IMG/VR virus record: IMGVR_UViG_3300050821_013430
Span: 124,001-188,000 of that record
DNA length: 64,000 nucleotides
Direction: 5' to 3' (one strand)
Within the stretch, counting starts at the first letter, position 1; every line of letters starts with the position of its first letter. The position numbers and the translations under genes are program-made. This document shows, one piece after another, positions 239 to 61,120 of this stretch. Under the pieces are notes generated by a model. The model was not told the DNA's origin. It saw nothing but the letters and a program-made list of their open reading frames with translations, and searched no databases.

Positions 239-1321
239 TTATCCTTTTAATATAACTTTGGCTATCAATTGGGCTATAATCGGCTTTGATGTTTCAGTTT
301 TAGCCGATGGATTAAATGGTGGCTTAAAAGGAGGTTTAACTTCCTTAGATGATTCTGGTTTAGCTGGTGGATTATTTTGAATGTATTCCTTGAGAGACTC
401 TATTTTAGCAGATTCTTCCGGAGAAACTGGAGCAGGAATTGGTTTTGAAATAGGTAATCCTGGATACGGTTTGGTAGGAGTAGAAGATGGTTTACCAGAA
501 GAAGGGGACGACGGTCCTCCGACAGTCGAAGCGGGGGCGCCTGGAAGTACCCCTCCTACACCGAGAGCTTTGGACTTAGCCTCTTCTGCTGCTTTTTGAG
601 ATTCAATATAACTTTTAACATATTTGTTGTAAAAATCATTGAAAGACTTATTATAGGCACGATATTTATTGTTGATGCCTGGCAACAGTCGAACATAATC
701 TTCAATTTTACGACCTACCCGATATTTACCTAATTGTTTAAGTAAATTAAGGAAGGTCGATGATAATGCCTTGCTCTTGTTAAGCATATTGTTAGTTTGA
801 TTTTTTAATTCTCTAGCTGTTTGTGGAAAACGCTTTTCCCATTGTCGCAGCCCTTTGCCACGATCAGTGGTCATTGAATACCACCAATCAGATAGCCCAG
901 CCTCTTTAACACTAGCAGTTTTAGTAGGAGCGCCTTTGAACCATTTAGGCATCTTTTCCATCAGATACTCTTTTTGATTCGGATCTAAATCTCCAAATAA
1001 AAAAGCATGATGATGTTTATGTACTACATCATTGAGGCCTTGGAAGGCTGTCATAATTTCTTCCATCTTCTCGTGAAATTTAGCCAAATAAGAAATAGCA
1101 AACATATACTCGCGACGATTGAAATTAGATTCCGCTATTTTGAGATAATCTTTAAGCTCAAAAGCCTTTTCACGAACTTCGTCATCAACACTAATCAGTT
1201 TGTCGATAATTTCTCGATACTCATCAGACCCTAAAAAATCGGTCTTTAGATCTTTCAATTTCCCAAAAGTTTTTTCTTTGGTACGTTGAAGCCAATTGAG
1301 TCGTTGTGCAATCTTATCCAT
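239..1321 (-). CDS. Hypothetical protein, probably virion-associated; Pro/Ser-rich C-terminus
   Basis: 360-aa ORF directly downstream of the portal; contains KIAQ and KTAS motifs. Confidence 0.6.
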   Translation of the reverse strand: MDKIAQRLNWLQRTKEKTFGKLKDLKTDFLGSDEYREIIDKLISVDDEVREKAFELKDYLKIAESNFNRREYMFAISYLAKFHEKMEEIMTAFQGLNDVVHKHHHAFLFGDLDPNQKEYLMEKMPKWFKGAPTKTASVKEAGLSDWWYSMTTDRGKGLRQWEKRFPQTARELKNQTNNMLNKSKALSSTFLNLLKQLGKYRVGRKIEDYVRLLPGINNKYRAYNKSFNDFYNKYVKSYIESQKAAEEAKSKALGVGGVLPGAPASTVGGPSSPSSGKPSSTPTKPYPGLPISKPIPAPVSPEESAKIESLKEYIQNNPPAKPESSKEVKPPFKPPFNPSAKTETSKPIIAQLIAKVILKG

Positions 1322-1361
1322 ATTTAGCCCTCTATGTGTGAGAATGCCATTTTATCGCCTA

Positions 1362-3242
1362 TTAGGCTGGCGGAGCCGCTGGTGGCGGGCCACCTGCTGG
1401 AGGAGGGGGTGGGGGAGGTCCCCCTGCGCCACCTGCTGGGGGTGGTGAGGGCAGAGGGGGTGGCGATCCACTACCACCTAGGCCTGGGAGACCGCTCATC
1501 GGAGGCATTCCTCCTCCCGCAGCCTCTTCTCCGGCTCCCGTTTCGCCTGGAACTGGTGCTTCCTTGGCATCCTGAGTATCGGGCTCTGGAATTTCATTAT
1601 CCTCACCATCACCCAAAGAACGAAGAGCGTTAAGCGGCATTTTCTCGAGAGAGGCCGCTTCTTTAGTTTCAATAGCGGCCTGAATCATTTCTTTGCGTTT
1701 CTTACGAACTTCATCTTCCCATTCCAAACCCATCGCACGATAGAGAGAGTGAAGGGAGGCTCGTTTTTCTTCACCCTTGCCGCTAGTCAGTGTGACTAAA
1801 TTCTGGATATAATCAGCGGTATCGAAGAGAGACATATGATTCCAATCAATTTCTGGAACAATCAGTCTCTTTTTCTTATCCTTGTATTCGTAAAAACCTT
1901 GTATCTTAGATATGGGGGCGAAGATTTTGTTTCGTAACCAAGAACCTAACATATTTCGGAATTGCATATACCGCTGACGAAGAACATCCAAAGCAACGCC
2001 ACCGTTGGCATAAGTGGTATCAGCTCCGCCATCCATCAATACTTGTGGAACCTGCAAACCAACATAGATTTCTTTCATCAATTGAGTAATATCGCCAGAA
2101 ATATCGTAGATGCCCTGATTCCATCCAACACGCTCAACCGCAACGCCTTCGTGAGTAAAAATCTTGAAATCCTGATCGTACTGAGCCGCTTCAAATACAT
2201 TGCGCCAAGCTTCCAAATCTAAATGAGTTGGCTTATAATCAGCCGATCCTATCTTTACGATAGTCATTGGATTGATCATATTTACGGCTTGTACATACTT
2301 AGCTTCTCTTAATTGATCGAACAACATTAGCTGTCTAAAAATACAAACTGGCAAACCCGTTCCACGAATTTCATATGGGCTAATTTTACGCGCTAAGTGA
2401 TGAATATGGAAATTATCCAATACAATATTTTCTCCGCGTTTTACCGCATCAATAATATATTGATTGAGCTGCTTTTTTTGTTCTAAATCTGCTGGACGAT
2501 TTGAATTAATGATACGTTTCAAATTTTCGTCAGGCCGCATCATAATAATAGGCTCATTGGCTACTACAGTGCGTTTTACAATCATATAGTCTGGATTTTC
2601 AATTAATAACCGACTCCACATACCTTTAGTATTATCTAATTCACCATAAACAAAGGCTTCACCTAAAAGAAAATATTCCTGAGCAATTTGAGTACAAATA
2701 TTGATCAAATCCAAATTTTCAATCATTTCATCAAAGAATTGTTGGATTTCTGCATTTTTACATTTGATATTTAACTTACTAATTGGGTAAGTACTGTGCA
2801 AATTAATCGCATTATGCACGAAAGGGTTTAGCGCATAGAAACTACGACACCAAGCATTGATGGTGACACGATCTCTCGGTAAATTAAGATTGCTGTTCAA
2901 CCATAGTGGTGAATAAACTTGTGGGACTTGTTTGACTGAATCGCCCATCCCACCCCTATAATTAGAGCCCGGACCGACGCCCCCATCTAAAAACTGCCCT
3001 CCGCTTAACACCTGGGCATGCTTAGCTATACGCACCGAAGCCACTACATTAGCGTTAGCAGTCTCACCAGATGCTAAATTGGTGGAACTACCATCCCGAT
3101 AAATTCCGGATGCTACATCATCGGCCAACATATTGCGACGTTCCTCAGAAACTGAGGAAGCCACCAGAGCACTAATCTGAGGCGGTTGCGAGGATTTGGC
3201 TTCCAAATATTTCTCTGAATTTGACTTGACGAACTTATTCAA
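1362..3242 (-). CDS. Phage portal protein
   Basis: 626 aa, directly downstream of the terminase. Portal-like segments (NPFVHNAINLHSTYP, YFLLGEAFVY, HLARKISPYEIRGT, VGLQVPQVLM). Acidic and Pro/Gly-rich C-tail. Confidence 0.8.
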   Translation of the reverse strand: MNKFVKSNSEKYLEAKSSQPPQISALVASSVSEERRNMLADDVASGIYRDGSSTNLASGETANANVVASVRIAKHAQVLSGGQFLDGGVGPGSNYRGGMGDSVKQVPQVYSPLWLNSNLNLPRDRVTINAWCRSFYALNPFVHNAINLHSTYPISKLNIKCKNAEIQQFFDEMIENLDLINICTQIAQEYFLLGEAFVYGELDNTKGMWSRLLIENPDYMIVKRTVVANEPIIMMRPDENLKRIINSNRPADLEQKKQLNQYIIDAVKRGENIVLDNFHIHHLARKISPYEIRGTGLPVCIFRQLMLFDQLREAKYVQAVNMINPMTIVKIGSADYKPTHLDLEAWRNVFEAAQYDQDFKIFTHEGVAVERVGWNQGIYDISGDITQLMKEIYVGLQVPQVLMDGGADTTYANGGVALDVLRQRYMQFRNMLGSWLRNKIFAPISKIQGFYEYKDKKKRLIVPEIDWNHMSLFDTADYIQNLVTLTSGKGEEKRASLHSLYRAMGLEWEDEVRKKRKEMIQAAIETKEAASLEKMPLNALRSLGDGEDNEIPEPDTQDAKEAPVPGETGAGEEAAGGGMPPMSGLPGLGGSGSPPPLPSPPPAGGAGGPPPPPPPAGGPPPAAPPA

Positions 3243-3290
3243 CTAGATTACCTCTTACAAAATGCCGCAAGAGCCCTATATCCAAAGTGA

Positions 3291-5165
3291 TCAAAATTTT
3301 CTGGAAATATAGGCCCCAACTACAAGGGGCTGTTCTTTTTGACCCGGCATAAGATTACCGACCATACCTTTGGTTGTAAAACCTTTAGTAATATGAAATT
3401 TGTAAGCAAGGTATGCATTTAATAGCGCGGCTAACCCATCGTTCGGGCTACTACCTTTTACATAATGAATTTGAGGGTCACCAGATCTAGAAATAGATGG
3501 TTTAATATCCATACTAGAACAATGTTGAACTAACCAAGCAATTTTTTCATAACTACCATAGGGAAATTTTACCTCTCCTCGTTTTAATTTGTCAAATAAT
3601 TCGGCCAGATAAAAATCTTTCTCAAAAATGATTTCTTTTGGAAATGTATCTTTACTGAACTTAACTTTGTCATTAATTTTGTTATGAGCTCTAGAAACTA
3701 GATAACGATCCCCATAAATGTTAGCAAGAATTTCAGAAAAATCATTTGAATATCCAATATCTCCGACCGCCAATCTAACATTGTATCGACGCATAATTTG
3801 ATCGATAGCCGCTTTCTTACTTTCTACATCATTGTACCTAAATTTGGTAGCATATTCGATAGAAAGAATAGTTGGAGTACGTGGTACAATTAAAACTGCA
3901 CTGCTAAATGATTGACCCCTATCTTTATACTTTTCTGGATTTGCAATGGCTTCCAAATCTGATTTGGCACCATAGTCAATTCCTAAAAAAGCAACCATTT
4001 CATCAGCAGGAGTGATTTGATTCCGCATCTTTCTACCGGGCTCACCGCACTGCTCTCGAATTTCCTCAGCAGTAATTGGAGTTGAATCGCCGTGATAAAA
4101 CTCCCCCAATACTTCATTTTTATATGCACGTTCGGTTTGAGTAGGATGAATGCCTGGCTTATTAGCCAAAATCTTTTCTTTAGTTAGATAAGGCATGAAT
4201 AATTGATTAATATGAAAACCAACATATAAACATTCATTAGAGTCTTTAGTGGAAACCCATTTTCCTCTTTCAGCGGACTCTCTCTTATCTTGTTCATGAT
4301 TACAGTGCGTACATTTTACAATGTAATCATAGAGCCAAATTTTTTCCCAGTCATCATTTTCCGGCGTACAAAGAGGAAAATGTTTTTTACAAGATTCACA
4401 TCCTAAATAATAATATTGTTGAGAAGACGCCAACCATCGTTTATGGAATGATGAGCCTTTTCTCTTGGGAGTACCAAAATATACTTGTACCCCTATACCT
4501 TCAGGACCATATTTAGAAGCGGTAAGGATTTTGACAGCATTATTGATGGCTTCATCAGTCATATCTTGCACTTCATCAAAAAAGAAAAAATCAGCAGTAC
4601 GTCCGCGAAGTCTATCAGCATCAATACCGGTTGAATCAATACGAATACTATTGCCATTAGAAAATTGTTTGAAACCTAATGAGTCTCCAGAATCACTATT
4701 TTTATCCAATAAACATTGCATATATGATTCTAAACGTTTAGCCTTTTTATCTGGATTTGTAATAATAGAGCCACTAATCATTGGATTAAGTTTAGTTTTA
4801 GTGTAATCGGCAGCCATTGCCAATTGAGGAAAAGCATGAATAATACGAGCGGGAGGCTTATCGCCGAATCCGAAAAGACCAGAGCCTGTAAAATACATTT
4901 CTAGGACCGCAGCCATAATAGTTCCACCTACCTGACGTCCCTTTACTAGTACTACCGGTTTTGCATCTTTTTCTAAAGCCTTAATGCCAATATAGCGATA
5001 AATATCCGCAAAAGGTTTAAATCCATTAGAATGAAGCCGAAAAGGCGAGCCCTCTAGAGTCAAATATTTTTCTGCAAAACCAACGGGGTCTAATTTGAGA
5101 ACATTTTCCTTGAAAAGAGAAAATAATTCTTCCTTGGGTGTCAAATGAGATGAATGAACCGGCAT
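3291..5165 (-). CDS. Terminase large subunit (GpA-like with Zn ribbon)
   Basis: Walker A-like VKGRQVGGT, Walker B FFFFDEVQD, coupling motif GTP, CxxC...CxxC, RNase H-like GIDYG and C-terminal PNDGL. Confidence 0.9.
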   Translation of the reverse strand: MPVHSSHLTPKEELFSLFKENVLKLDPVGFAEKYLTLEGSPFRLHSNGFKPFADIYRYIGIKALEKDAKPVVLVKGRQVGGTIMAAVLEMYFTGSGLFGFGDKPPARIIHAFPQLAMAADYTKTKLNPMISGSIITNPDKKAKRLESYMQCLLDKNSDSGDSLGFKQFSNGNSIRIDSTGIDADRLRGRTADFFFFDEVQDMTDEAINNAVKILTASKYGPEGIGVQVYFGTPKRKGSSFHKRWLASSQQYYYLGCESCKKHFPLCTPENDDWEKIWLYDYIVKCTHCNHEQDKRESAERGKWVSTKDSNECLYVGFHINQLFMPYLTKEKILANKPGIHPTQTERAYKNEVLGEFYHGDSTPITAEEIREQCGEPGRKMRNQITPADEMVAFLGIDYGAKSDLEAIANPEKYKDRGQSFSSAVLIVPRTPTILSIEYATKFRYNDVESKKAAIDQIMRRYNVRLAVGDIGYSNDFSEILANIYGDRYLVSRAHNKINDKVKFSKDTFPKEIIFEKDFYLAELFDKLKRGEVKFPYGSYEKIAWLVQHCSSMDIKPSISRSGDPQIHYVKGSSPNDGLAALLNAYLAYKFHITKGFTTKGMVGNLMPGQKEQPLVVGAYISRKF

Positions 5166-5171: not shown

Positions 5172-5834
5172 TTACTTTACTTTGGATGGCATCAAAATAT
5201 GCCACGCGTCTCGATTAGAAGCATCTATATCCTCTTCATCGAAGTGATGTAGCTTACCTAAAGAATCGGCATTTGATTCGGCATCTGGATATTTACGCTT
5301 AACCTCTATATTTTTGTCATTAAGATATTTGAGAAAATTAGGATCATCCCAGTCTGCATCACTAGCATCCGACCGATGAATGGCTTTTATTCTTTCAATA
5401 ATTGATGGGATGGGCAAATTTCCACGACTATCTTCTATACAATTATTAGCGGTTGATTTAACCTGAGGACATTTTCTAAAAAGAGCGATTGGCTCTGACG
5501 AATCATTGGCTTTTTTGATTTGCTCTGCGCGCGCTTTTACCTGCTTCCAATAAGCACTAATACCGCTTCTTTCTTGCATATCTTCTACCGCAGCCTCAAC
5601 AGTAGGATATTTCGATTTATTCCCCATGATGGAAGAAATCTGATCATAAAGAGAACGTTGTTCTACATCTTTTCGAGACTCTACGCTGCTTTTTTCTAAA
5701 TTTTTAGCAAAATCGCGAAGCCAAGAAGGTTCTGTTGAAGAATCTTCTACCGAATAAGATTCTCGTGTAATGAGTGGTAAGGTGCGATAAGAGTATTTTT
5801 TCATTGGGATTAAACTTGAAAATTTGGCATCCAA
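5172..5834 (-). CDS. Hypothetical protein (morphogenesis block)
   Basis: 220-aa ORF upstream of the terminase; the true start may be the second Met (MKKYSY). Confidence 0.55.
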   Translation of the reverse strand: MDAKFSSLIPMKKYSYRTLPLITRESYSVEDSSTEPSWLRDFAKNLEKSSVESRKDVEQRSLYDQISSIMGNKSKYPTVEAAVEDMQERSGISAYWKQVKARAEQIKKANDSSEPIALFRKCPQVKSTANNCIEDSRGNLPIPSIIERIKAIHRSDASDADWDDPNFLKYLNDKNIEVKRKYPDAESNADSLGKLHHFDEEDIDASNRDAWHILMPSKVK

Positions 5835-6775
5835 TCGTAATTTTCTGGCGATCTCTGATCGACCGTCGCCGTATCAGTTGAAAATCCACGATCTTGACGA
5901 AAATAGTGTCCCATATCTTCGAGGAGTTGAATCAATTCCGCCTGTTCTCTTTTATCTAAATCATATTCCTTTACTTGTCTGGCAAAAAGTTCTTCAATAT
6001 CTTTACCGGCTGATACTGCACCATTGGCACACACTCTTGCGATTCTAGAAATAAGAAGAGGAACTGTAATTACAATGCCATCAATACGAGTAGCTTTTTG
6101 ACCTTCTTTGACTAAGCCAAAGAGTTCTTCAGCTCTTTTCTTTTTCTTATTTTTCTTGCTTACAATTTTTTCATAACGATCGTATAGTCTTCCCTTACCG
6201 TCATCAATCTTAGAACGAATTTCTTCGATTTTGTTGGCATCTAGTTTGCCATCCAAGTCTGCGCACATTGCATCGGAAATACCATCATCAGCTTTCTCGA
6301 AATATTTAATACATCGTTCAATACCACTTTCATCATAACCAGAATGTTTTGGCACTCCGTCTAAAAGTTCTTTGATTCTGGCAACTACCGCATCAGTGCC
6401 GTGCTGAATAAGATGTTTCAGATCAAACTTATCTTTTTCTTTTTCTTTGGGCTTTGATTTTGATAAATTATTGGCGTCAGAAGATTCCATTGTTGAAGAA
6501 TTATCTTCTGAAACTTCTAATTCCTTTTCTCGTTCTGGGTCCAAATGATCAACACCGGGTAAATCTTGTACTACGATTTCTAGATCGTGAGGCTCTTCTA
6601 AAGATACTTCATGAGCATGATCATGCATTTCGGGTTCATGCATCTCTAAAACCAATTCTTTACTAGGCTCCTCAGAATAAAAAACGATTGGTTCTGCTTT
6701 ATTTTCTGGCGCTAAATGCAAAGATGGTGAATCTTCAACCAAAATATCGCTTAGGGCCTGTGCAATTGATTCCAT
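5810..6775 (-). CDS. Hypothetical protein with acidic N-terminal half
   Basis: 321-aa ORF with GAGG SD upstream. Confidence 0.6.
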   Translation of the reverse strand: MESIAQALSDILVEDSPSLHLAPENKAEPIVFYSEEPSKELVLEMHEPEMHDHAHEVSLEEPHDLEIVVQDLPGVDHLDPEREKELEVSEDNSSTMESSDANNLSKSKPKEKEKDKFDLKHLIQHGTDAVVARIKELLDGVPKHSGYDESGIERCIKYFEKADDGISDAMCADLDGKLDANKIEEIRSKIDDGKGRLYDRYEKIVSKKNKKKKRAEELFGLVKEGQKATRIDGIVITVPLLISRIARVCANGAVSAGKDIEELFARQVKEYDLDKREQAELIQLLEDMGHYFRQDRGFSTDTATVDQRSPENYDWMPNFQV

Positions 6776-6800: not shown

Positions 6801-7238
6801 TTATGCAAGGGGTATCTGATCCTTATGTTTTGATTCGGATTTTTCCGATGAATCTTCTTCCGATTCTTCCTGTATTTCTCCGTCATCTGCTGGAAACCAA
6901 TGGGTGTCTGTTACCCCATAATATAGATTACCCGATGGCTTATTTTCCAAATCTTCCTGAGGGTATATTCCATCCGTTATTCCCATAGGGGAAATTTCTG
7001 CTGGATTATATGGCGGATTGAAAAATTCTTCGGTTGGATCAACCAAAAAATTCTTATCCGAAGTTTGCAATAAAATATTCAACATAGATTGACGTCGTTT
7101 TTGTTGTTTTCTTTTCTTTTTACGAAAGTCGGAAACACTTTTATATTTTGTCATATCCTGATACAAACCTTTACCAGGTCCGCTCGGATCATTTACATAA
7201 TCGTAATTCTTAAAAAAGACAAAAGGTTTTTTGGGCAT
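6801..7238 (-). CDS. Hypothetical protein
   Basis: Likely start is MPKKPF at 7238, a TAATG overlap with the upstream stop. Confidence 0.5.
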   Translation of the reverse strand: MPKKPFVFFKNYDYVNDPSGPGKGLYQDMTKYKSVSDFRKKKRKQQKRRQSMLNILLQTSDKNFLVDPTEEFFNPPYNPAEISPMGITDGIYPQEDLENKPSGNLYYGVTDTHWFPADDGEIQEESEEDSSEKSESKHKDQIPLA

Positions 7239-7993
7239 TATACCACCAATCTTTTGCGATAATATGGATATAACGCCTCTGATATGGGCACATATTTCCA
7301 TAATCCCATTTGATCAAGCAGATATGCCGTTCGATCGGCATCAAATTCTATAGCTTTGTCTAATTTTTCCTGTAAGGCGTGTTCAGAAGAAATTTTGATT
7401 GATGCTGGATTTTTCTTTATCCATTCCATCAAAGATGGCTCTAACTCAAAATTGAGTTTTGCAGCTAAATATATAGCTCTAACTACTCTATTCTTATTGG
7501 TGGTTAGGGTAATTTCTGGTGGCAAATTGGTTCTAATTATCTTGTTTTTGATATCTTTGGCGCCCATTCCGGTAGGATCTAATACTCTTTCAAGATCAAA
7601 AGAAAGTAAAAGACTATTACAAGTAAAATCTCTGCTGAAAAATTCTCGTTGTAGATTGGTTGGATTTTTGATGCCTAACTTTTGGAGAATTTCAACAATA
7701 TTTGGAATAGTAAAATTTGATGAAAAATCTAATTTAATATTTCCAAAAAATATAGAAATGTGTCCATCATCCATAATTTTGGTTTTGATATCAAAATGCT
7801 TACTCAAAAGAATAGATACTTCTTTAGCCAAATTATGAACAGTCTTATCACCAGTGGCAATATCCAAATCGCTTAAATTGTTAGCTCGATCTAAAATTAC
7901 ATCTCTAGGAACTCCTCCACACAAAAAAGGTTTGGAAGTTCCCGCCTTTTTCTGTATGAATTCAATAATACGAAGGAGCTCTCGAAGTTTCAA
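7238..7993 (-). CDS. Class II nucleotidyltransferase (CCA-adding enzyme / poly(A) polymerase family)
   Basis: GGxxRD (CGGVPRD), DxD (DLDIAT), RDFTxN (SRDFTCNSL), DPTGMG..DI, RVVRAI. Confidence 0.85.
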   Translation of the reverse strand: MKLRELLRIIEFIQKKAGTSKPFLCGGVPRDVILDRANNLSDLDIATGDKTVHNLAKEVSILLSKHFDIKTKIMDDGHISIFFGNIKLDFSSNFTIPNIVEILQKLGIKNPTNLQREFFSRDFTCNSLLLSFDLERVLDPTGMGAKDIKNKIIRTNLPPEITLTTNKNRVVRAIYLAAKLNFELEPSLMEWIKKNPASIKISSEHALQEKLDKAIEFDADRTAYLLDQMGLWKYVPISEALYPYYRKRLVV

Positions 7994-10517: not shown

Positions 10518-11237
10518 TTACTTATTATATCCGTGCAGTCGCTCTTCTCTAGTATTAAAGATTGCATGAGTTTGATCGAGTTCGGAGGCTGGCCCCTGCA
10601 ATGCAACTGATCCGCCTGGGACACGCTCTCCCCGTTCGGTAGTGTATCCAAGAGCATAATTATATACTTTACCATCTAATGAGCATTTCCATATTGAATC
10701 ATCTACTCTTTGCATTTGCGCACCAGCATGATCTGGGCACGATCTTGTTTGTAATGGGGCTTCCATAATTCGGTATGCTTTACTAAACGGGCTTTTTTCA
10801 ATTGCCTTTTCTGCCTCTGCAACATGATTTACTTCATGAAGTTGTTCTCTTGTTGATTGATAATTATTTTTGATAGAATCTATTTTTCCATCTTGTTTTT
10901 GTTTGAATTTTTTAGCCCAATCTGGCGGAGCCGCAACAGTCAACAAAAGCTCATCAATTACGGAAGCCGCTTTTTTCAGATCTACATCGCCAGACATATC
11001 AAGAGCGGTAGTCATCGTATTCAATTGATCCAAATTTTCTGTAGTAAGAATCGATTCTGCTTGCGGCTCTAGGTGTTCTAATTCCTCGGCCCCTTGACGT
11101 AAAATAGTAGCGGCCTGAACACAAACCTGAGCCGCTTTGGTTAGGCAGGCTTCATCGTATTCGGCTAACATCAGAGCCTCATTATCGGGACTTTCTAGCC
11201 AACTGGCAACTGCTGCTAAAAATTCTGCAATTCTCAT
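10518..11237 (-). CDS. Hypothetical protein with C-terminal Cys/His motif
   Basis: 239-aa ORF; CPDH...C motif. Confidence 0.55.
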   Translation of the reverse strand: MRIAEFLAAVASWLESPDNEALMLAEYDEACLTKAAQVCVQAATILRQGAEELEHLEPQAESILTTENLDQLNTMTTALDMSGDVDLKKAASVIDELLLTVAAPPDWAKKFKQKQDGKIDSIKNNYQSTREQLHEVNHVAEAEKAIEKSPFSKAYRIMEAPLQTRSCPDHAGAQMQRVDDSIWKCSLDGKVYNYALGYTTERGERVPGGSVALQGPASELDQTHAIFNTREERLHGYNK

Positions 11238-52963: not shown

Positions 52964-53641
52964 ATGACTGTCAATAAAACTGCCCAAGCCGTAGACCCCC
53001 AAATTGCCTCTTATTTGGCCCGCGCCCTCTCTACGGCCGTAGCCAACGCCTCCGCTAAGGTAGGCCCAATCAAAAGCTCCTTTGCTCCATATACCCACAT
53101 GGAAGGCGAGCGTTTTATTGTCATCGCAGACTTCAATCCGCCCCTAAGCGATCCGCAAAGAGAAGCGGTCTCGGGTAATTTTACTGCATACTTGCAGGCT
53201 AACAATCCTCAATTAGCCAGCAAAGTCGTTCTTCAATTCTCTCAATCAGGAAAAACTGCCATGGACAATAAAACCGCAACTCTCAAACTTTTGGCTGTCG
53301 TCAAAAAGCAACAAGCAATGATTGAGAAGTTAGCTCAATCGGCTCCGGTTCATCCGGCTGCTCAAACACCAGCACCACAACATATGGATCCCGTCAATCC
53401 TTCTAAACGAGAAGCGGAGACAATCCTCAACGCTCTATCTGCCAATGTTCGTGCGTTGATTGCCAATTTAGAAGTACATCCAGGTGCTGGTGGCAAAGAG
53501 GTAAAAGTTTTCGCAAAACCAGGGCAGCCTGATCATGCTCTCGATGTAGTACAAAGGGCGGTACAAAATACCGTGGCCAGCCTTGCTCAAAAGAATATGC
53601 TTCCCCCTCCGGCCGCATATAAAGTTCAAGTCCAAGGCTAA
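52964..53641 (+). CDS. Hypothetical protein, putative head-internal protein; internal module shared with 54105
   Basis: KTAQ, KTAM and KLAQ motifs; internal MDNKTATLKLLAVVKKQQAMIEKLAQ. Confidence 0.55.
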   Translation: MTVNKTAQAVDPQIASYLARALSTAVANASAKVGPIKSSFAPYTHMEGERFIVIADFNPPLSDPQREAVSGNFTAYLQANNPQLASKVVLQFSQSGKTAMDNKTATLKLLAVVKKQQAMIEKLAQSAPVHPAAQTPAPQHMDPVNPSKREAETILNALSANVRALIANLEVHPGAGGKEVKVFAKPGQPDHALDVVQRAVQNTVASLAQKNMLPPPAAYKVQVQG

Positions 53642-53649: not shown

Positions 53650-54108
53650 ATGGATCTCGAACGACTCAATAAACTCGCCGCGGTTTTTTGCAAAACGGCC
53701 GATGAGGTGGATTCGACCAATTTGGGATTTACTATTCGTCCTGTTGTTGAAAAGTTCTTGCCGCAATTGAAAGCGGTAGTATCAAAAATCGTGCAACAAG
53801 TTGCCTCAAAAAATACCGATCTAAGCGGAGATATTATGGTTGGGAAAGCCTTTTTTACTAATGCTAAAAAAGAAGGCGACAATTGGACGGTACTACAAAC
53901 TCAAATCAAAGCGGATGGTAGTCTTCTACAAGACAAACGAGTGGGGCCAGCCATCGAAGCCGTAATCAATCAATTCAACAATCAGATCAAAATTCCTGTC
54001 CAAAAAGAAATCAATCGGATGAAAAATAGTTTGGGCGGGGGAGAAACCATTACCAATCACGAGACCGCAGTCGCCAGTTTTTCTTTTGGCGTAGGAGATG
54101 CTTCATGA
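53650..54108 (+). CDS. Hypothetical protein
   Basis: 152 aa; N-terminal leader ending in KTAD. Confidence 0.55.
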   Translation: MDLERLNKLAAVFCKTADEVDSTNLGFTIRPVVEKFLPQLKAVVSKIVQQVASKNTDLSGDIMVGKAFFTNAKKEGDNWTVLQTQIKADGSLLQDKRVGPAIEAVINQFNNQIKIPVQKEINRMKNSLGGGETITNHETAVASFSFGVGDAS

Positions 54109-54485
54109 ACGACAAAAATACAACACTCAAACTTTTAGCCATTGTCAAAAAACAACAAGCGATGATTGAAAGACTAGCCAATTGGTCAGGGGCGGTTAGT
54201 CCTGCCTCGGTATTACAAGCAAATACTCCTAATAGTGCTGGCAGTATGGCTGGGGCACCAGAAAGCGCTAAACAGCGCATCCAAGCCATGATTATTCCAA
54301 TGAAGTTGGAAATTATTGATTTGGAATGGGGCACACTTCCAAAAATAGTACTGCAAGGCCAAAAAGTAGATTATCCAAGACCGCATGCTGATCAAGATTT
54401 GGTTGCTCGCTTGAAACCACGCCTTTCTACAATAATGGATGACTATCAAAAACACGGTATTGTGCTTAGCATTCAACTTGTTTAG
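54105..54485 (+). CDS. Hypothetical protein with N-terminal module shared with 52964
   Basis: MNDKNTTLKLLAIVKKQQAMIERLAN; AGGAG SD. Confidence 0.6.
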   Translation: MNDKNTTLKLLAIVKKQQAMIERLANWSGAVSPASVLQANTPNSAGSMAGAPESAKQRIQAMIIPMKLEIIDLEWGTLPKIVLQGQKVDYPRPHADQDLVARLKPRLSTIMDDYQKHGIVLSIQLV

Positions 54486-54510
54486 CTTCAAATTCGAACG
54501 GCATTTAATA

Positions 54511-55197
54511 ATGAAAGATGTTTGTACAATCTATATTATACAAAATAATTTCAATGATAAAGTTTATATTGGCCAAACTTGGCAACCCGTCAATAAGCGT
54601 TTCAATGCACATCTAAAAGATAAAAAAGGCTCCTGTCGTAAGTTATTCAATGCTTTCAATAAATACGATCGCGCGAATTTTTATATCGCGGTATTAGCGG
54701 TTTGCAATACACAATCAGAAGCAGATTGGCTGGAAACCTGCTGGATAGATATTTTCGATAGTCGTATAAATGGATACAATCTTAGAAGTGGCGGATCACG
54801 CGGCAAACATTCAGAAGAAAGCAAACAAAAGATGAGCACCGATCGAAAAGGCAAAATGCTTGGAGAAATACATCCAATGTATGGCAAGCATCATACCGAG
54901 GAAACTAAAGCCAGAATGTCAAAGTCCAAAAGAGGAAAGGTTCAATCCGAAAAAAGCAATCATAAAAGATCAGAAGCATTGAAGGGACGATCGATTCTTA
55001 CGGAAATTCAAGTTCAGCAAATCCGGGAAAGCCACATGCAAATGAAAAGTTATCGTACATTAGCTAAAGAATTTGATATATCTATAACTACAGTGGAACG
55101 CGTGGTAAAAAAGAAAAGTCCATATAATAAACCGCTTACTGATGAAGCAAGCATAGCAAGACAAAATAATAGCCAGTCTAAACTTTTTGGTACTTAG
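54511..55197 (+). CDS. GIY-YIG homing endonuclease with NUMOD3 repeats and HTH
   Basis: IYIIQNNFNDKVYIGQT, GYNL, HSEESK/HTEETK; start at MKDVCT. Paralogue of 14030-14866. Confidence 0.88.
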   Translation: MKDVCTIYIIQNNFNDKVYIGQTWQPVNKRFNAHLKDKKGSCRKLFNAFNKYDRANFYIAVLAVCNTQSEADWLETCWIDIFDSRINGYNLRSGGSRGKHSEESKQKMSTDRKGKMLGEIHPMYGKHHTEETKARMSKSKRGKVQSEKSNHKRSEALKGRSILTEIQVQQIRESHMQMKSYRTLAKEFDISITTVERVVKKKSPYNKPLTDEASIARQNNSQSKLFGT

Positions 55198-56185: not shown

Positions 56186-56255
56186 CCTCCTACGAATGAA
56201 ATTTAGTGCTTCATTGAAAACAATACCGCATTAGCCCTAATTGGGCAAGAAAAAG

Positions 56256-56332: not shown

Positions 56333-56337
56333 AAAAT

Positions 56338-56394: not shown

Positions 56395-56399
56395 ATAAG

Positions 56400-56732: not shown

Positions 56733-57068
56733 TTATTTTCCTTTCAATGCCAGTTTCAGATGTTGGCATAATCTTTTGCTTTTCTCACCGGGCGCCAATG
56801 CTATCGCAGTGAGTTCGTCTTCCAAATCCGGCTCTCGAAATAATGTTCGTTCGATGTTTTGTTCTCTGGCTTGTCGAGCAAGCTCCTGCAAGTCAAATTT
56901 ACTTTCAGTTCGCAACACCACAATATAGTTTGAGGTCGTTAGCCAATGCTTTGCACTCTCAGGATGTTCGATCATAAAAGTGGTAGCGGCGTGGCAGGCC
57001 TGAGCGATTTGTAGTCCTGGTGCGAGATCGCCCCGCACCACGATGTAGAGTTTATCAATCTATGACAT
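56733..57068 (-). CDS. PTH2-family (peptidyl-tRNA hydrolase II-like) protein with in-frame UAG at codon 3
   Basis: ATG TCA TAG ATT GAT AAA CTC TAC ATC GTG GTG CGG = MS*IDKLYIVVRGDL; then AQACHA, IVVL, FREPDL..ELTAIAL. The ATG overlaps the upstream TAA (TAATG). Confidence 0.8.
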
Positions 57069-57484
57069 TAGAGGCCCAGCACTTTCAATATCTTGCCAAA
57101 AACGGTATGGGCGATTTGGTTGGTGGCTGGCATGGCAGCAGGTTTAGCAGCGGGCAGTGATTCGTCTTGCAGCCAAGCCTTCACTCTTTCCAAAGTCCAG
57201 ACGCCGGGGACGTTATGGGCCTCGATGATTTGCAATATAAGCCCCGCTGAGGGCTTATTGTCGATCCGACATCTAGGCTCCAAGACCTTGTAGAAAACGC
57301 CTCTAAGGGCTGCGTAAGCGAGCAAATGATGTCTTGATTGACTTCCGACGGAACGCTTGATAGAGCAAAGCGACCAAGCCTTCTCATCCTTTTTGGCTTT
57401 TTTGATTTGGGATCGGAGTTGTTGAGACTTGTCCGAGAGTCCGTTGATTTTTGCTACTAAAAAATGTCTATAATATTTATTCAT
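57068..57484 (-). CDS. Hypothetical protein (RHHLLAYAALRG motif), first gated gene of the amber operon
   Basis: 138 aa; AAGGAG SD 7 nt upstream. Confidence 0.7.
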   Translation of the reverse strand: MNKYYRHFLVAKINGLSDKSQQLRSQIKKAKKDEKAWSLCSIKRSVGSQSRHHLLAYAALRGVFYKVLEPRCRIDNKPSAGLILQIIEAHNVPGVWTLERVKAWLQDESLPAAKPAAMPATNQIAHTVFGKILKVLGL

Positions 57485-57764: not shown

Positions 57765-57781
57765 CTCTAACTATATATCCT

Positions 57782-58135: not shown

Positions 58136-58154
58136 TGTCTTTCTCTGTAAATTT

Positions 58155-58506: not shown

Positions 58507-58522
58507 GTTATCCTATGTAATT

Positions 58523-58786: not shown

Positions 58787-58805
58787 TCGTGCTTTCTCAA
58801 TATAA

Positions 58806-59351: not shown

Positions 59352-59398
59352 TATTCTCTCGCTTTCAATGAGAGATTATATCGACACTTCCGCGTTTA

Positions 59399-59740
59399 TC
59401 AATCGTATTCCAACCAAAAATAATGAATGAAATATGCTACATCGTTAGGGTCATACCAATCGAGATCGCCGTAATGCTTTACGAAATCCTTGATGGCGTT
59501 ATGGGGTAGGTTATGTTTGATTTCCTCGAAGGCTCTGGCCTGCGACATTGGCGGTTCGTTGCCTTCGTCCAACGGAGTGGCGGTTGGGTCATCCCACGGC
59601 TCTAAGGGCTCTTCTTCGGGCTGGTCTAACTGCTCGCGCCGGATGCCCTCAAACATTCCTTCTTGGGCAAGTTTCTCAAAAATAATACATCGAGTGCGTA
59701 AATTACCGTATGCCATAGAAATAATGTTGAAATATGCCAA
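59399..59740 (-). CDS. Hypothetical protein
   Basis: 113 aa; FEKLAQ motif followed by an acidic region. Confidence 0.5.
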   Translation of the reverse strand: MAYFNIISMAYGNLRTRCIIFEKLAQEGMFEGIRREQLDQPEEEPLEPWDDPTATPLDEGNEPPMSQARAFEEIKHNLPHNAIKDFVKHYGDLDWYDPNDVAYFIHYFWLEYD

Positions 59741-60505
59741 TCAGTGTTTTTTGATGATATCTTGGAGAAATTCCTTTTCCGAAGTGAAAATCGGAACATC
59801 GGTATTTAGAGCCCAACGCTCTTTTACAATATCCTCGCCGTTGTAATTGATCGTCTCCGGGCGTCGGTAGCACACTACGCCTCTCCTAAATTCGACCGGA
59901 TACTCATAGAAATCAATTCCCGCTTCTTCTTTCAATAGTTTGATCTTCTCTTCCAAGGAAGTATCCATCAGCATCTCTTCGATTTCGTGTTTCCTATACT
60001 TCTTGATCAATTCATAGAAACAAGCCAGCCTAACTGCAATTTGGTGGGCTCGTTGCTGATGATATACCATAACATTTACTGCCTCAGTAAGATTAGGGAC
60101 GGTAAAAATCTTGCTCAAAAAGATGGGGTCGCCCGACAAATTTACTTCCAATTCTGCTGCAGCATCATTGAAATGGAGCGTGGCAAGAGAAGAAGCGGCA
60201 GAAATAATTTTGGAAACGGAATTATCATACCAAGGCTGAGTATCCAAAGTTTGATCGTTTCTTACAATTATTGTAATTTCATCGTTGAACGAATAAGCAA
60301 AAACTGCTCCCTCAATTTCTTGAACGAGATCGGCCATCGTGGCATAGAGGCATTGTCCAAGTTCCAAAGAAAATGGTTTTGGTAGCAAGGAAGTGATCTT
60401 GCTGAAATTTCTTCCGTTGAGATTGATGATCAGCGGCACTCGGGGCATCAGTCTCGGGTCGCAAATATCCTCATAACTTGTAATTCTGGCTTTCAGTGGC
60501 TGCAT
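59741..60505 (-). CDS. Thg1-like protein (tRNA-His guanylyltransferase / 3'-5' polymerase family)
   Basis: YE...P.II.LNGRNFS.T...KPF, YSFNDEI, SKIISAASS, FRRGV. Confidence 0.85.
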   Translation of the reverse strand: MQPLKARITSYEDICDPRLMPRVPLIINLNGRNFSKITSLLPKPFSLELGQCLYATMADLVQEIEGAVFAYSFNDEITIIVRNDQTLDTQPWYDNSVSKIISAASSLATLHFNDAAAELEVNLSGDPIFLSKIFTVPNLTEAVNVMVYHQQRAHQIAVRLACFYELIKKYRKHEIEEMLMDTSLEEKIKLLKEEAGIDFYEYPVEFRRGVVCYRRPETINYNGEDIVKERWALNTDVPIFTSEKEFLQDIIKKH

Positions 60506-61120
60506 TTATTTTGTCTTTATTTGTCGTACTATATCGAGAAGAACGGTTCTAATGTTGCCACCAACCTTACTATACAGCGTGGCATTTATCGCACCGTCAG
60601 GAATTGCCGGAGATTGAATTTGATTTGTCAAAATGCTAACGGTTTGCATTCGATTAGCGGTAGGAACGGGAGCGGCGAAATCATAACCATTATTTTTGAT
60701 CATCCTACGAAAAACTAATTTTCCAAGATTGGCCAAGGCACTAACCAATGGTGTATAAGCGCTCGTGTCAATGCCGAAAGACTGATCGTAAAGTCTTGCA
60801 AAATCCAGTTTGCCATTAGAAGTAATGTAGATGGCCTGATTGAGCGCATTGACTAATTGACGAATGAAATTGAGATTGTTGGCACCCCATCCTAAAACCA
60901 AGGTCGGGGAGACGGTAGCAGGATCAAAAGGTCGTGGGGAGCCAGAAACAACGGTCGGAGTAGTTGATGTAGCGGTAGAAGCGGGCGAGGACGGAGCAGC
61001 GGGAGCGGCGGGAGTTGCTGCTTGTGCCAGTCGAAATAATGTCCTAAGTCTGCCGTTCATATAAGAAATGTCGGAAAAACGCCTTCGTCTTTTCGGATAT
61101 AGGGACTGGTATGAAAACAC
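60506..61120 (-). CDS. Hypothetical virion-like protein
   Basis: RLAQ followed by an Ala/Pro/Thr linker; true start probably MNGRLR. Confidence 0.5.
   Translation of the reverse strand: MFSYQSLYPKRRRRFSDISYMNGRLRTLFRLAQAATPAAPAAPSSPASTATSTTPTVVSGSPRPFDPATVSPTLVLGWGANNLNFIRQLVNALNQAIYITSNGKLDFARLYDQSFGIDTSAYTPLVSALANLGKLVFRRMIKNNGYDFAAPVPTANRMQTVSILTNQIQSPAIPDGAINATLYSKVGGNIRTVLLDIVRQIKTK

What the first reader, a model, noticed from the sequence alone, without database searches (positions are those of the whole stretch)
239..61120. Shared K-x-A-[Q/S] motif across many unrelated virion-like proteins (candidate head-protease or packaging signal)
Examples: KIAQ and KTAS (239), KHAQ (portal), KTAY/KTAQ/KVAQ (8003), KYAQ (11234), KVAS (11891), KTAS (13511), KAAS (47785), KTAQ/KTAM/KLAQ (52964), KTAD (53650), RLAN (54105), KLAQ (59399), RLAQ (60506). 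It often closes a short N-terminal leader or precedes a low-complexity linker. Established: T4 and phiKZ head proteases cut many head proteins at short motifs. Inference: a cleavage or capsid-targeting code with a Lys-x-Ala specificity that marks scattered genes as head-internal proteins.
Basis: inference. Interest (0 to 1): 0.6.

Follow-up and report, generated by a model that had tools for sequence, protein, structure and literature searches.

The report
Head-protein Lys-x-Ala-Gln/Ser motif in megaphage
A short Lys-x-Ala-Gln/Ser signature is specifically over-represented in the head-assembly proteins of this 473-kb phage and its relatives, and it most likely marks where the capsid-maturation protease cuts, though no cleavage has been shown.

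Summary
The window is part of a 472,749-bp phage related to Bacillus phage G. All cited strings exist. Within the window alone the excess of K-x-A-[Q/S] (27 vs 12.7) is no better than chance once the post-hoc choice is allowed for (K.AQ ranks 11 of 8,000). The signal is nevertheless real. It is confined to the head module (23 vs 8.9; rest of genome 52 vs 53.5). It replicates in all 22 relatives with full-length portal flanks (296 vs 114), and K.AQ ranks 1st to 4th of 8,000 motifs in four of the five most divergent relatives ranked. It is sharply specific (K not R; A; Q>Y>S) and survives local shuffles and permuted controls. About half the cited instances are conserved, several at ends of folded units before Pro-rich linkers or near N-termini. 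Two are not conserved and six are untestable. A prohead protease domain (T4 gp21/assemblin fold) lies 3.6 kb outside the window, fused to a ~950-aa extension. The same blind test on T4 recovers its known I/L-x-E code. Best reading: a new cleavage or recognition code (K-x-A↓Q/S) for head maturation. Cleavage itself is unproven.

The parts
1362..3242 (-). Portal protein gene (626 aa). It carries the best-supported site.
   Evidence: phrog_16240 at 2.1e-54. 33.6% identical to phage G portal gp14.
3012..3023 (-). Portal residues 74-77, KHAQ. A conserved island (hydrophobic-x-K-x-[A/G/S]-[Q/S/N]) between gap-rich linkers, about 45 residues before the conserved portal core.
   Evidence: Column conservation: K 95%, x 2%, Q 79%, against a local identity of only 0.29. 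Phage G gp14 has RKMAS at residue 55, about 30 residues before its LPRDR core.
239..1321 (-). 360-aa orphan protein directly downstream of the portal gene.
   Evidence: No PHROG or Pfam family. 49 orthologues at 24-34% identity.
1304..1315 (-). Residues 3-6, KIAQ. The N-terminus M-[D/Q/E]-K-x-A-Q is almost invariant.
   Evidence: 42 of 47 orthologues keep [KR].A[QS], with K .98, x .21, A .91, Q .98. In the L081 lineage the leader is longer, with KEAQ at residue 10.
8003..9730 (-). 575-aa orphan protein: helical units joined by long, probably disordered Pro-rich linkers. It carries three conserved sites.
   Evidence: AF2 model mbb8c4e3402da has pLDDT below 50 at residues 58-82, 145-188, 291-344 and 356-405.
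9512..9523 (-). Residues 70-73, KTAY. A conserved K-x-A-Y inside a predicted disordered segment.
   Evidence: K.A retained in 81% of orthologues, and Y follows in 22 of 27. The site lies in the low-pLDDT segment 58-82.
9293..9304 (-). Residues 143-146, KTAQ, at the C-terminal edge of a confidently folded unit.
   Evidence: K 100%, A 100%, Q 82%, x variable (F/T/K/V/M). pLDDT falls from residue 145.
8873..8884 (-). Residues 283-286, KVAQ ([S/K]-x-A-Q across the clade), at the end of a helix and directly before a gap-rich Pro-rich linker.
   Evidence: A 89%, Q 96%. Helix 275-289 is followed by the low-pLDDT segment 291-344.
10962..10973 (-). Residues 89-92, KAAS, of the 239-aa orphan protein (10518..11237). 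The clade consensus is L-K-[K/R]-x-A-S-V.
   Evidence: 16 of 19 orthologues keep [KR].A[QS], with x variable (Q/M/V/A/I).
13751..13762 (-). Residues 73-76, KTAS, of the 155-aa protein (13511..13978), in a gap-rich loop.
   Evidence: 4 of 5 orthologues from complete relatives have K-x-A-[S/A] here.
5505..5516 (-). Residues 107-110, KKAN, of the 220-aa protein (5172..5834). This is a degenerate local version of a clade-wide K-x-A-[Q/S] island flanked by gaps.
   Evidence: 24 of 31 orthologues carry K.A[QS] at this column.
6098..6109 (-). Residues 223-226, KEGQ, of the 321-aa protein (5810..6775). The clade majority is KEAQ.
   Evidence: The site is present in 21 of 31 orthologues (20 of 31 in the variant tally); this phage has Gly in place of Ala.
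53327..53338 (+). Residues 122-125, KLAQ, of the 225-aa accessory protein (52964..53641), at the end of a helix-like segment and followed by a Pro/Ala-rich linker.
   Evidence: The only orthologue found (L165) keeps KLAQ followed by a Pro-rich stretch.
54171..54182 (+). Residues 23-26, RLAN, of 54105..54485. This is a paralogous copy of the 52964..53641 segment, not an independent example.
   Evidence: 66% identity over 35 aa between residues 1-35 here and residues 100-133 of 52964..53641.
61022..61033 (-). Residues 30-33, RLAQ, of the 204-aa protein (60506..61120), directly before a Pro/Ala/Ser-rich linker.
   Evidence: Both orthologues keep it, as KLAQ and KIAR, followed by the linker.

Best explanation
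Phi-x-K-x-A-[Q/S, also Y] is a real short linear motif used by the head-morphogenesis proteins of this phage-G-related megaphage clade.

Most likely it is the recognition site of the phage's own capsid-maturation (prohead) protease, which would cut at K-x-A | Q/S, that is P3 Lys, P1 Ala, P1' Gln/Ser. The protease is the N-terminal domain (about residues 36-262) of a 1216-aa protein. Its gene lies 3.6-7.3 kb before the window start (genome 116743..120393 = L001:12743-16393, minus strand).

Under this model, processing would:
- trim N-terminal leaders, for example from the portal, the capsid protein's 44-aa extension, and small variable proteins between the capsid and protease genes;
- separate helical units from Pro-rich linkers;
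- cut up the protease's own ~950-aa, scaffold-like C-terminal extension, including a conserved site 38 residues from its C-terminus.

Shown: the motif's existence, specificity, head-module restriction, conservation and placement, and the presence of the protease domain.

Inferred: that this protease recognises the motif, that cleavage occurs at all, and where the scissile bond is.
For: 1. Head-specific excess in this genome: 23 vs 8.9 (p 5e-5) in the head module against 52 vs 53.5 elsewhere. Control motifs in the head module mostly lie near 1x (range 0.67-1.65).

2. Replication in relatives. All 22 relatives with full-length portal flanks show it: K.A[QS] 296 vs 113.8 and K.AQ 164 vs 41.5. Capsid-gene flanks give 142 vs 67.4.

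3. Unbiased ranking among 8,000 motifs. K.AQ ranks 1st in L073 (p 7e-7), 2nd in L081 and L075, 4th in L082 and 7th in L059.

4. Positional specificity. Position 1: K 2.9x, R 0.7x. Position 3: A 2.9x. Position 4: Q 4.2x, Y 2.4x, S 2.1x. L/M/F are favoured two residues before the Lys.

5. Robustness. Local 20-aa shuffles give z 5.3 here, 10.3 in L081 and 7.4 in L073. Ten reversed, permuted or re-spaced versions give 0.7-1.25x against 3.28x for the motif.

6. Independent gains. The divergent sub-clade has 9-11 lineage-specific sites against 2-3.7 expected, and the protease-bearing protein family has 25 distinct sites.

7. Conserved sites with a free x position sit in poorly conserved or gap-rich surroundings in the portal, the 360-, 575-, 239-, 220-, 155- and 336-aa proteins, the capsid protein's N-terminal extension and the protease protein.

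8. Placement. 31 vs 17.1 sites fall in the first 40 residues (p 7e-4). Pro-rich linkers follow 9.3% of sites against 2.9% of other lysines (p 2e-4). In the AF2 model of the 575-aa protein all three conserved sites lie in a disordered segment or at its edge, while the non-conserved K-x-A lies inside a confident helix.

9. The protease domain. phrog_18299 'head maturation protease' at 6.6e-15. NCBIfam NF045541 prohead protease/MCP fusion at 1.6e-6, far below that family's cut-off. 33% identity to phage G gp19, which is annotated as the head maturation protease in PMC12484599. Best full-domain structural match is T4 gp21: Z 6.1 with 118 of 164 residues aligned, followed by herpesvirus proteases at Z 3-4.

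10. Phage G has RKMAS at the equivalent portal position and an excess of K.A in its head locus, 37 vs 22.1.

11. Positive control. The same blind statistic on the T4 head cluster ranks I.E 1st and L.E 4th of 400, and the neighbouring non-head genes do not show it. T4, phiKZ and SPN3US head proteases cut at short P3-x-P1 motifs and process the capsid protein, the portal, internal proteins and themselves (PMC5694885 and PMC10052503).
Against: No proteomic or biochemical evidence of cleavage exists for this phage or for phage G in the literature I could reach.

In this phage's own sub-clade the excess rests mainly on about 8 conserved sites; lineage-specific gains there are not significant.

Strict column-based tallies did not single out K.AQ or K.A. 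K.A instances are retained only slightly more often than average: 23% against 14%, p 0.04, rank 15 of 399.

Some conserved sites lie inside well-conserved blocks and may be purely structural, for example portal residue 315 and residue 143 of the 575-aa protein.

The site in the 360-aa protein would release only a 5-residue leader.

The flanking pattern (hydrophobic at -5, -2 and +1) looks like the end of an amphipathic helix, which would suit a docking motif as well as a cleavage site.

The protease model has low confidence (pLDDT 60) and its catalytic residues were not mapped.

Phage G's capsid protein lacks the N-terminal extension altogether.

The complex prediction gave no verdict.
Confidence: 0.5

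Rival explanations
1. Capsid-targeting or docking motif without obligatory cleavage. The motif ends an amphipathic helix that binds the inner capsid shell, the scaffold or the portal. The following flexible Pro-rich linker tethers a cargo domain. This would resemble encapsulin cargo-loading peptides or the T4 capsid-targeting sequence.
For: Hydrophobic preferences at -2, and by eye at -5 and +1, fit one face of a helix. Pro-rich linkers follow the motif three times more often than other lysines. The arrangement helix, then motif, then linker, then domain is seen in 52964..53641, 60506..61120, site 283 of the 575-aa protein, and the protease protein. The N-terminal MDKxAQ of the 360-aa protein would leave a leader too short to be useful if cut.
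Against: Sites also occur many times within one protein, up to 10 in the L081 protease-scaffold protein. That suits fragmentation better than docking. The P3-x-P1 grammar and the set of carriers (portal, capsid protein, the protease itself) match known protease substrates. Docking and cleavage are not mutually exclusive: the T4 targeting sequence contains its own cleavage site.
Confidence: 0.25
2. Substrate motif of a different enzyme, such as a host protease (as host Prp trims staphylococcal phage 80alpha capsid proteins) or another phage protease such as a ClpP homologue, rather than the assemblin-fold prohead protease.
For: Nothing links the motif specifically to the 1216-aa protein's protease domain other than co-location in the head module. 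Phage G virions contain ClpP and ClpX (PMC12484599). The complex prediction gave no verdict.
Against: The motif's next-residue preference differs between this clade (Q/S) and phage G (S/N/G/A). That is more easily explained by co-evolution with a phage-encoded enzyme. The protease protein itself carries the most sites, including one at the start of its catalytic domain in both phages. I did not look for a ClpP gene in this genome.
Confidence: 0.1
3. No shared function. The excess reflects structural preferences, such as helix C-terminal capping in helical head proteins, plus shared ancestry among the relatives and selection of the motif after the fact.
For: Within the window alone the post-hoc rank is unremarkable. 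Column-based recurrence tests were negative. The closer relatives show no significant independent gains. Two cited sites are not conserved.
Against: K.AQ ranks 1st to 4th of 8,000 in four of the five most divergent relatives ranked (10th in L077), tested after the hypothesis was fixed. Lineage-specific gains reach p 1e-5. Arg does not substitute for Lys, and reversed or permuted motifs are flat. There is no excess outside the head module. Local shuffles give z of 5-10.
Confidence: 0.08

Closest known systems
Prohead-protease cleavage codes of T4 (gp21), phiKZ (gp175) and SPN3US (gp245)
   Same: A short P3-x-P1 motif shared by many unrelated head proteins. The substrates include the capsid protein, the portal, abundant internal or ejection proteins and the protease itself. 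Most cleavages release N-terminal propeptides, and extra motif copies occur inside propeptides (PMC5694885 and PMC10052503). The protease has the same fold class. The blind enrichment statistic behaves the same way in T4.
   Different: Those enzymes cut C-terminal to Glu (A-x-E in SPN3US; all four phages cut after Glu per PMC5694885). Here the conserved positions are Lys and Ala followed by Gln/Ser, with no acidic P1. The protease is fused to a ~950-aa extension instead of being a ~200-260-aa protein. Cleavage has not been demonstrated here.
Herpesvirus assemblin-scaffold polyprotein (pUL26) and its R and M sites
   Same: An N-terminal protease domain is fused to a long scaffold part. Cleavage is after Ala with Ser or Thr next: the pseudorabies sites are YLQA-T and VQA-S, and the M-site removes the last 37 residues (PMC4498786). 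Here the N-terminal protease domain has a long extension, the motif has Ala followed by Ser or Gln, and a conserved K-S-A-G lies 38 residues from the C-terminus (K.A retention 0.92). Herpes proteases appear among the fold matches.
   Different: Position 1 is Lys here, whereas my recollection of the herpes consensus is an aliphatic residue there. Gln is preferred over Ser. Structural similarity to the herpes enzymes is weak (Z 3-4). A Cys/His cluster is inserted in the domain. Many more proteins carry the motif.
Bacillus (Lysinibacillus) phage G head module (portal gp14, protease gp19, capsid gp27)
   Same: It is the closest cultivated relative: capsid protein 53.5% identical, portal 33.6%, protease domain 33%. 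It has K-M-A-S at the equivalent portal position, K-T-A-A at the start of the protease domain, and an excess of K.A in the head locus.
   Different: The residue after Ala is S/N/G/A rather than Q. The protease gp19 is a 300-aa protein without the long extension. The capsid protein lacks the 44-aa N-terminal extension. Other motif-bearing proteins have no detectable homologues there.
T4 capsid-targeting sequence and encapsulin cargo-loading peptides
   Same: A short terminal peptide, often joined by a flexible linker, marks proteins for incorporation inside an HK97-fold shell. Here the motif lies near N-termini or at the end of a helix before a Pro-rich linker.
   Different: No binding to the shell has been shown. 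The motif also occurs internally and repeatedly. This resemblance rests on my own knowledge of those systems and was not tested.

Membership tests
Prohead-protease cleavage code (T4 gp21 / phiKZ gp175 / SPN3US gp245 type) | A phage-encoded capsid-maturation protease of the gp21/assemblin/HK97 fold in the head module | tested here: met
   phrog_18299 at 6.6e-15. NF045541 at 1.6e-6, below its family cut-off. 33% identity to phage G gp19. T4 gp21 at Z 6.1 with 118 residues aligned. Model confidence is only moderate (pLDDT 60).
Prohead-protease cleavage code (T4 gp21 / phiKZ gp175 / SPN3US gp245 type) | Conserved catalytic Ser and His residues | tested here: inconclusive
   His134, Ser136, Ser185 and His211 are invariant in 26 sequences. 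They were not mapped onto the gp21 catalytic residues, and the loops 134-142 and 183-191 have pLDDT below 50.
Prohead-protease cleavage code (T4 gp21 / phiKZ gp175 / SPN3US gp245 type) | A short motif over-represented in head proteins but not in the rest of the proteome | tested here: met
   23 vs 8.9 in the head module against 52 vs 53.5 elsewhere. Replicated in 22 relatives. T4 positive control: I.E ranks 1st and L.E 4th in head genes only.
Prohead-protease cleavage code (T4 gp21 / phiKZ gp175 / SPN3US gp245 type) | Sites in the capsid protein, the portal, internal proteins and the protease itself, mostly bounding N-terminal propeptides | tested here: met
   Portal residue 74, capsid protein residue 26 (LVKYA[A/S/Q]), protease protein residues 36, 588, 653 and 1176, and N-terminal sites in several orphan proteins. 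Enrichment in the first 40 aa, p 7e-4.
Prohead-protease cleavage code (T4 gp21 / phiKZ gp175 / SPN3US gp245 type) | Cleavage C-terminal to Glu (P1 = Glu) | tested here: not met
   The conserved positions are Lys, Ala and Gln/Ser. L.E and I.E are unremarkable in this head module, ranking 57 and 218 of 400. If this is a protease code, its specificity differs.
Prohead-protease cleavage code (T4 gp21 / phiKZ gp175 / SPN3US gp245 type) | Demonstrated cleavage at the motif in virions or in vitro | not testable with these tools
   No proteomic data are available for this clade. The phage G papers reachable here give no cleavage sites.
Herpesvirus-type assemblin-scaffold fusion | An N-terminal protease domain fused to a long scaffold part, with sites after Ala including one near the C-terminus | tested here: inconclusive
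   The architecture is present: the domain spans about residues 36-262 of 1216. A conserved K-S-A-G lies 38 residues from the C-terminus. A scaffold role for the extension and cleavage at these sites are not shown.
Capsid-targeting / cargo-loading peptides | A short peptide sufficient for incorporation into the shell, joined to the cargo by a flexible linker | not testable with these tools
   Linker association is met (9.3% vs 2.9%). Binding and sufficiency need experiments. Complex prediction gave no verdict for the protease-portal pair.

The most novel reading that the evidence does not exclude
K-x-A-Q/S is a combined capsid-address and processing code specific to phage-G-like megaphages. 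It would let one read, from sequence alone, which orphan proteins are packed inside the giant capsid and possibly ejected into the host, and where they are trimmed. Its specificity resembles the Ala|Ser sites of herpesvirus assemblins more than the Glu sites of T4 and phiKZ. The protease sits at the N-terminus of a herpes-like protease-scaffold polyprotein, which would be an unusually close functional parallel between a phage and herpesvirus capsid maturation.
Probability: 0.2. Interest if true: 0.75.

Novelty: new variant of a known kind. Interest (0 to 1): 0.62.

Why it matters
Huge phages of this clade are known almost only from metagenomes, and most of their head-module genes are orphans.

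A validated maturation or targeting code would give a sequence-only way to predict which unknown proteins are head-internal, where their mature N-termini lie, and how the capsid interior is built in phages with genomes of about 0.4-0.5 Mb.

It would also add a new specificity, Lys-x-Ala | Gln/Ser, to the gp21/assemblin protease clan. That would bridge the Glu-specific phage enzymes and the Ala | Ser-specific herpesvirus enzymes.

Phage G is cultivable, so the prediction can be tested directly.

Tried and rejected
**Searches that found nothing useful**
- Megablast of 20 kb against annotated phages gave no match.
- Pfam found nothing for 10 head-module proteins.
- A PDB sequence search with the protease domain found nothing.
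- Foldseek alone gave only weak hits, E 0.06-0.7.
- The FtsK-like gene used as an anchor recovered only the same genome.
- No orthologues were found in five complete relatives for 11234..11884 or 59399..59740, and essentially none for 52964..53641. Those cited sites could not be tested.
- The phage G cryo-EM and mass-spectrometry paper (PMC7316594) is not held, and the 2025 phage G paper has no supplements held.

**Tests that did not single out the motif**
- Strict column-conservation tallies of exact a.bc and a.b motifs across 24 families put K.AQ and K.A level with arbitrary motifs. The fast alignments split some sites.
- The retention test for K.A was only weakly positive: p 0.04, rank 15 of 399.
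- The two-position K.A alone is only rank 16 of 400 in this head module. The fourth position is needed.

**No verdict**
- Complex prediction of the protease domain with portal residues 50-110 scored 0.02 against a mark of 0.32. That counts as no evidence either way.

- Arg at position 1 (0.7x) and D, M or N at position 4 (about 0.8-1.0x).

**Cited sites rejected as chance**
- KTAS-134 in 239..1321, kept in 1 of 47 orthologues.
- KLAS-35 and KVAS-472 in 11891..13501.
- KAAQ-34 in 10518..11237.
- KLAQ-10 in the protein just before the window, which is mostly KLVQ in relatives.

**Considered and set aside without a test**
- A Lys-Gln isopeptide cross-link motif. Ser and Tyr substitute for Gln, which argues against it.
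- Signal peptidase A-x-A sites. There is no hydrophobic signal segment.

Full report
**What the window is**

The 64-kb window is bases 124,001-188,000 of a single 472,749-bp contig. Genes are densely packed, mostly on the minus strand, there are no tRNAs in the window, and GC is about 39%. It has no near match among annotated phages.

PHROGs identify the portal (1362..3242) and the large terminase (3291..5165). Their neighbours include replication and nucleic-acid enzymes: primase, a RuvC-like resolvase, an SSB, GIY-YIG endonucleases, a tRNA nucleotidyltransferase, a Thg1-like enzyme and an FtsK-like ATPase.

The closest cultivated relative is Bacillus/Lysinibacillus phage G (497 kb). Its capsid protein is 53.5% identical and its portal 33.6%. 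IMG/VR holds a large clade of relatives, with contigs up to 480 kb and portals 52-78% identical.

**Checking the observation**

All cited strings are present. I built a simple non-overlapping ORF set of 718 genes, 86 of them in the window.

K.A[QS] occurs 27 times in the window against 12.7 +/- 3.5 in shuffles. The motif was chosen after reading, though. Among all 8,000 a.bc motifs K.AQ ranks 11th (p 9.5e-4, with about 7.6 expected at that level), and K.A[QS] ranks 57th of 76,000. On the window alone the finding would be dismissed.

**Localisation**

The hits are not spread evenly. They pile up in genome 100-140 kb (24 vs 9.6). This is the head module.
- The capsid protein is at genome 104382..105401 (phrog_2522, 2.8e-80).
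- A 1216-aa protein at 116743..120393 has residues 107-215 matching 'head maturation protease' (phrog_18299, 6.6e-15).
- The portal and terminase lie at the start of the window.

For genome 104-138 kb the count is 23 vs 8.9 (p 5e-5). For the rest of the genome it is 52 vs 53.5. Control motifs in the head module mostly lie near 1x, ranging from 0.67 to 1.65. Tail-like genes beyond the capsid gene show no excess.

**Replication in relatives**

I fetched +/-10 kb around the portal and capsid genes of 160 related contigs.
- Every one of the 22 full-length portal-flank loci shows the excess: K.A[QS] 296 vs 113.8 in total and K.AQ 164 vs 41.5. Capsid-gene flanks give 142 vs 67.4.
- In the most divergent relatives, tested after the hypothesis was fixed, K.AQ ranks 1st of 8,000 in L073 (12 vs 1.9, p 7e-7), 2nd in L081 and L075 (behind only Pro-rich low complexity), 4th in L082 and 7th in L059. 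In L081, K.AS ranks 3rd.
- Sites not aligned to any site of this phage number 9-11 against 2-3.7 expected in L081, L073, L075, L077 and L082 (p 1e-5 to 1.6e-3). These are independent gains.
- In this phage's own sub-clade such gains are not significant. There the excess rests on about eight conserved 'majority' sites.

**Specificity and robustness**

Scanning each position on ten lineages pooled gives:
- position 1: K 2.9x, R 0.7x, everything else 1.3x or less;
- position 3: A 2.9x, V 1.6x, L 1.4x, G 0.9x, S 1.0x;
- position 4: Q 4.2x, Y 2.4x, S 2.1x, E 1.6x, the rest about 1x;
- L/M/F favoured two residues before the Lys.

These scans share the same relatedness among the sequences, so they act as internal controls.

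Shuffling within 20-residue blocks gives z of 5.3 (this phage), 10.3 (L081), 7.4 (L073) and 6.0 (L075). Ten reversed, permuted or re-spaced versions of the same residues give 0.7-1.25x, against 3.28x for the motif.

**Conservation of individual sites**

Alignments of 24 orthologue families show sites where Lys and Ala (or a small residue) and Gln/Ser are kept while x varies freely, often in gap-rich surroundings.
- Portal residue 74: K 95%, x 2%, Q 79%, local identity 0.29. It is an island between gap-rich linkers about 45 residues before the conserved core.
- The N-terminus M-[D/Q/E]-K-x-A-Q of the 360-aa protein, kept in 42 of 47.
- The 575-aa protein at residues 70 (K-x-A-Y), 143 and 283. 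The last sits directly before a Pro-rich, gap-rich linker.
- The 239-aa protein at residue 89, kept in 16 of 19.
- The 155-aa protein at residue 73, kept in 4 of 5.
- The 336-aa protein near the capsid gene at residue 25.
- The capsid protein's N-terminal extension, LVKYA[A/S/Q], at residue 26.
- The protease protein at residues 36, 588, 653 and 1176.

At three clade-wide sites this phage carries degenerate versions: KKAN, KEGQ and KSGQ.

Outside the head module, KLAQ-122 of 52964..53641 and RLAQ-30 of 60506..61120 are kept in the few orthologues that exist, and both precede Pro/Ala-rich linkers.

Not conserved: KTAS-134 of 239..1321, both sites of 11891..13501, KAAQ-34 of 10518..11237, and KLAQ-10 of the gene just before the window.

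RLAN in 54105..54485 is a paralogous copy of the 52964 segment.

Stricter, fully automatic tests were weaker. Exact column tallies did not single out K.AQ or K.A, and K.A instances are retained 23% of the time against 14% overall (p 0.04).

**Placement**

Sites are enriched in the first 40 residues (31 vs 17.1, p 7e-4). They are followed by Pro-rich stretches three times more often than other lysines are (9.3% vs 2.9%, p 2e-4).

An AF2 model of the 575-aa protein (pLDDT 63) is a chain of confident helical units separated by low-confidence segments.
- Site 70 lies inside such a segment.
- Site 143 lies where a confident unit ends.
- Site 283 lies at the end of helix 275-289, just before the linker 291-344.
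- The non-conserved K-x-A at residue 109 lies in a confident helix.

**The protease**

Residues 36-249 of the 1216-aa protein align to phage G gp19 at 33% identity. gp19 is annotated as the head maturation protease in PMC12484599. In both proteins the alignment begins exactly at a K-x-A site (KFAE here, KTAA in gp19).

The domain is strongly conserved. His134, Ser136, Ser185 and His211 are invariant, and there is a Cys/His cluster. NCBIfam gives a weak match to a prohead protease/capsid fusion family.

The AF2 model is of moderate quality (pLDDT 60). Its best full-domain structural match is T4 gp21 (Z 6.1, 118 of 164 residues aligned), and several herpesvirus proteases follow at Z 3-4. Other rows with similar Z cover fewer residues of larger, unrelated proteins.

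About 950 residues follow the domain. In the L081 lineage this protein carries ten K-x-A-[Q/S/G] sites, several about 93 residues apart, and the family as a whole has 25 distinct sites. A conserved K-S-A-G lies 38 residues from the C-terminus.

**Phage G**

Portal gp14 has R-K-M-A-S at residue 55, about 30 residues before its LPRDR core. That is the same relative place as here, and identical to the KMAS seen in divergent clade members. Its head locus has K.A 37 vs 22.1, with S/N/G/A rather than Q in the next position. Its capsid protein (282 aa) lacks the 44-residue N-terminal extension found here.

**Positive control**

The same blind statistic on the T4 head cluster (genes 20, 67, 68, 21, 22, 23, 24 and inh) ranks I.E 1st (35 vs 16.2, p 3.5e-5) and L.E 4th of 400. 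In the neighbouring non-head genes they rank 254th and 108th. By my own knowledge the T4 gp21 motif is Leu/Ile-x-Glu; PMC5694885 confirms cleavage after Glu in T4, phiKZ, 201phi2-1 and SPN3US. So a head-restricted excess of a P3-x-P1-type motif of about 2-3x is what a known prohead-protease code looks like with this method.

**Interpretation**

The motif is real and functional (my estimate is about 0.9).

The best mechanism is recognition and cleavage by the phage's own prohead protease, written K-x-A | Q/S by analogy with herpesvirus assemblins. Those cut after Ala: YLQA-T and VQA-S in pseudorabies virus. They are also N-terminal domains of protease-scaffold fusions, whose M-site removes the last 37 residues (PMC4498786). 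I give this 0.5.

The carrier set parallels SPN3US, where gp245 processes the capsid protein, the portal (the longest propeptide), the ejection proteins and itself, almost always releasing N-terminal propeptides (PMC10052503).

A docking or targeting role without cleavage is the main rival (0.25) and could coexist with cleavage. Another enzyme (0.1) and no shared function (0.08) are less likely.

I found no description of such a motif for this clade in the held literature. That is not proof that none exists.

**Limits**
- Gene calls come from a simple ORF rule.
- The relatives are related to one another, so pooled p-values overstate independence. The lineage-specific counts and the internal controls address this only in part.
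- Only the head flanks of the relatives were held, so head restriction was tested in this genome alone.
- No alternative genetic code, read mapping or sequence outside the tools' rules was used.

Noticed in passing
window-wide, e.g. 22282..23112, 57068..57484, 62509..63513: K-x-Y-R is the most over-represented a.bc motif in the window: 16 vs 2.7, p 3e-8, which survives correction for 8,000 motifs. The 16 sites lie in 15 unrelated proteins with no common context. Unexplained.
   Followed up: partly
window 47785..48540 (-): In four complete relatives the two halves of this 251-aa protein (residues ~9-125 and ~132-250) match separate reading frames about 1.2 kb apart, some with in-frame stops. 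The cited KAAS-125 sits exactly at the junction. Either this is a fusion or uninterrupted form here, or the relatives carry an inserted element.
   Followed up: partly
window 52964..53641 (+) and 54105..54485 (+): These genes share a paralogous ~35-aa segment at 66% identity, followed in both by low-complexity Pro/Ala/Ser linkers. They belong to a small plus-strand island of poorly conserved accessory genes with higher GC, 0.42-0.44.
   Followed up: partly
L001:12743-16393 (-), i.e. genome 116743..120393, just before the window: The protease-bearing 1216-aa protein contains a ~100-aa internal tandem repeat (residues ~400-500 and ~500-600, nearly identical blocks). Its protease domain also has an invariant Cys/His cluster (C195, C198, C209, H211) that looks like a zinc-binding insert.
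   Followed up: no
L001:382-1401 (-), genome 104382..105401: The major capsid protein (339 aa) has a conserved ~44-residue N-terminal extension that phage G gp27 (282 aa) lacks. The capsid protein is unusually conserved across the clade, at 79-87% identity, while neighbouring head genes are only 20-50% identical.
   Followed up: partly
window 14030..14866 (-) and 54439..55197 (+): Two GIY-YIG homing-endonuclease genes of the same family (phrog_314, E about 1e-38 each). One is wedged between head-module orphan genes and a sigma-like or HTH gene.
   Followed up: no
window 7238..7993 (-) and 59741..60505 (-): tRNA-maturation enzymes are encoded here: a tRNA nucleotidyltransferase-like protein and a Thg1-like tRNA-His guanylyltransferase (2e-39). 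The first lies between the terminase and head-module orphan genes. There are no tRNA genes in the window itself.
   Followed up: no
genome outside the window (G000): The rest of the genome has massive excesses of G.TG (279 vs 77.5), G.QG, C.QC, T.PQ and P.GP. This points to large collagen-like, Cys-repeat or Thr/Pro-repeat proteins elsewhere, for example the 2349-aa protein at genome 92195..99244 and a collagen-like fibre.
   Followed up: no
G001-G003 (records behind L029, L040, L065): IMG/VR classes three complete 430-480-kb relatives as 'provirus', which is surprising for phage-G-like megaphages and may be a classification artefact.
   Followed up: no
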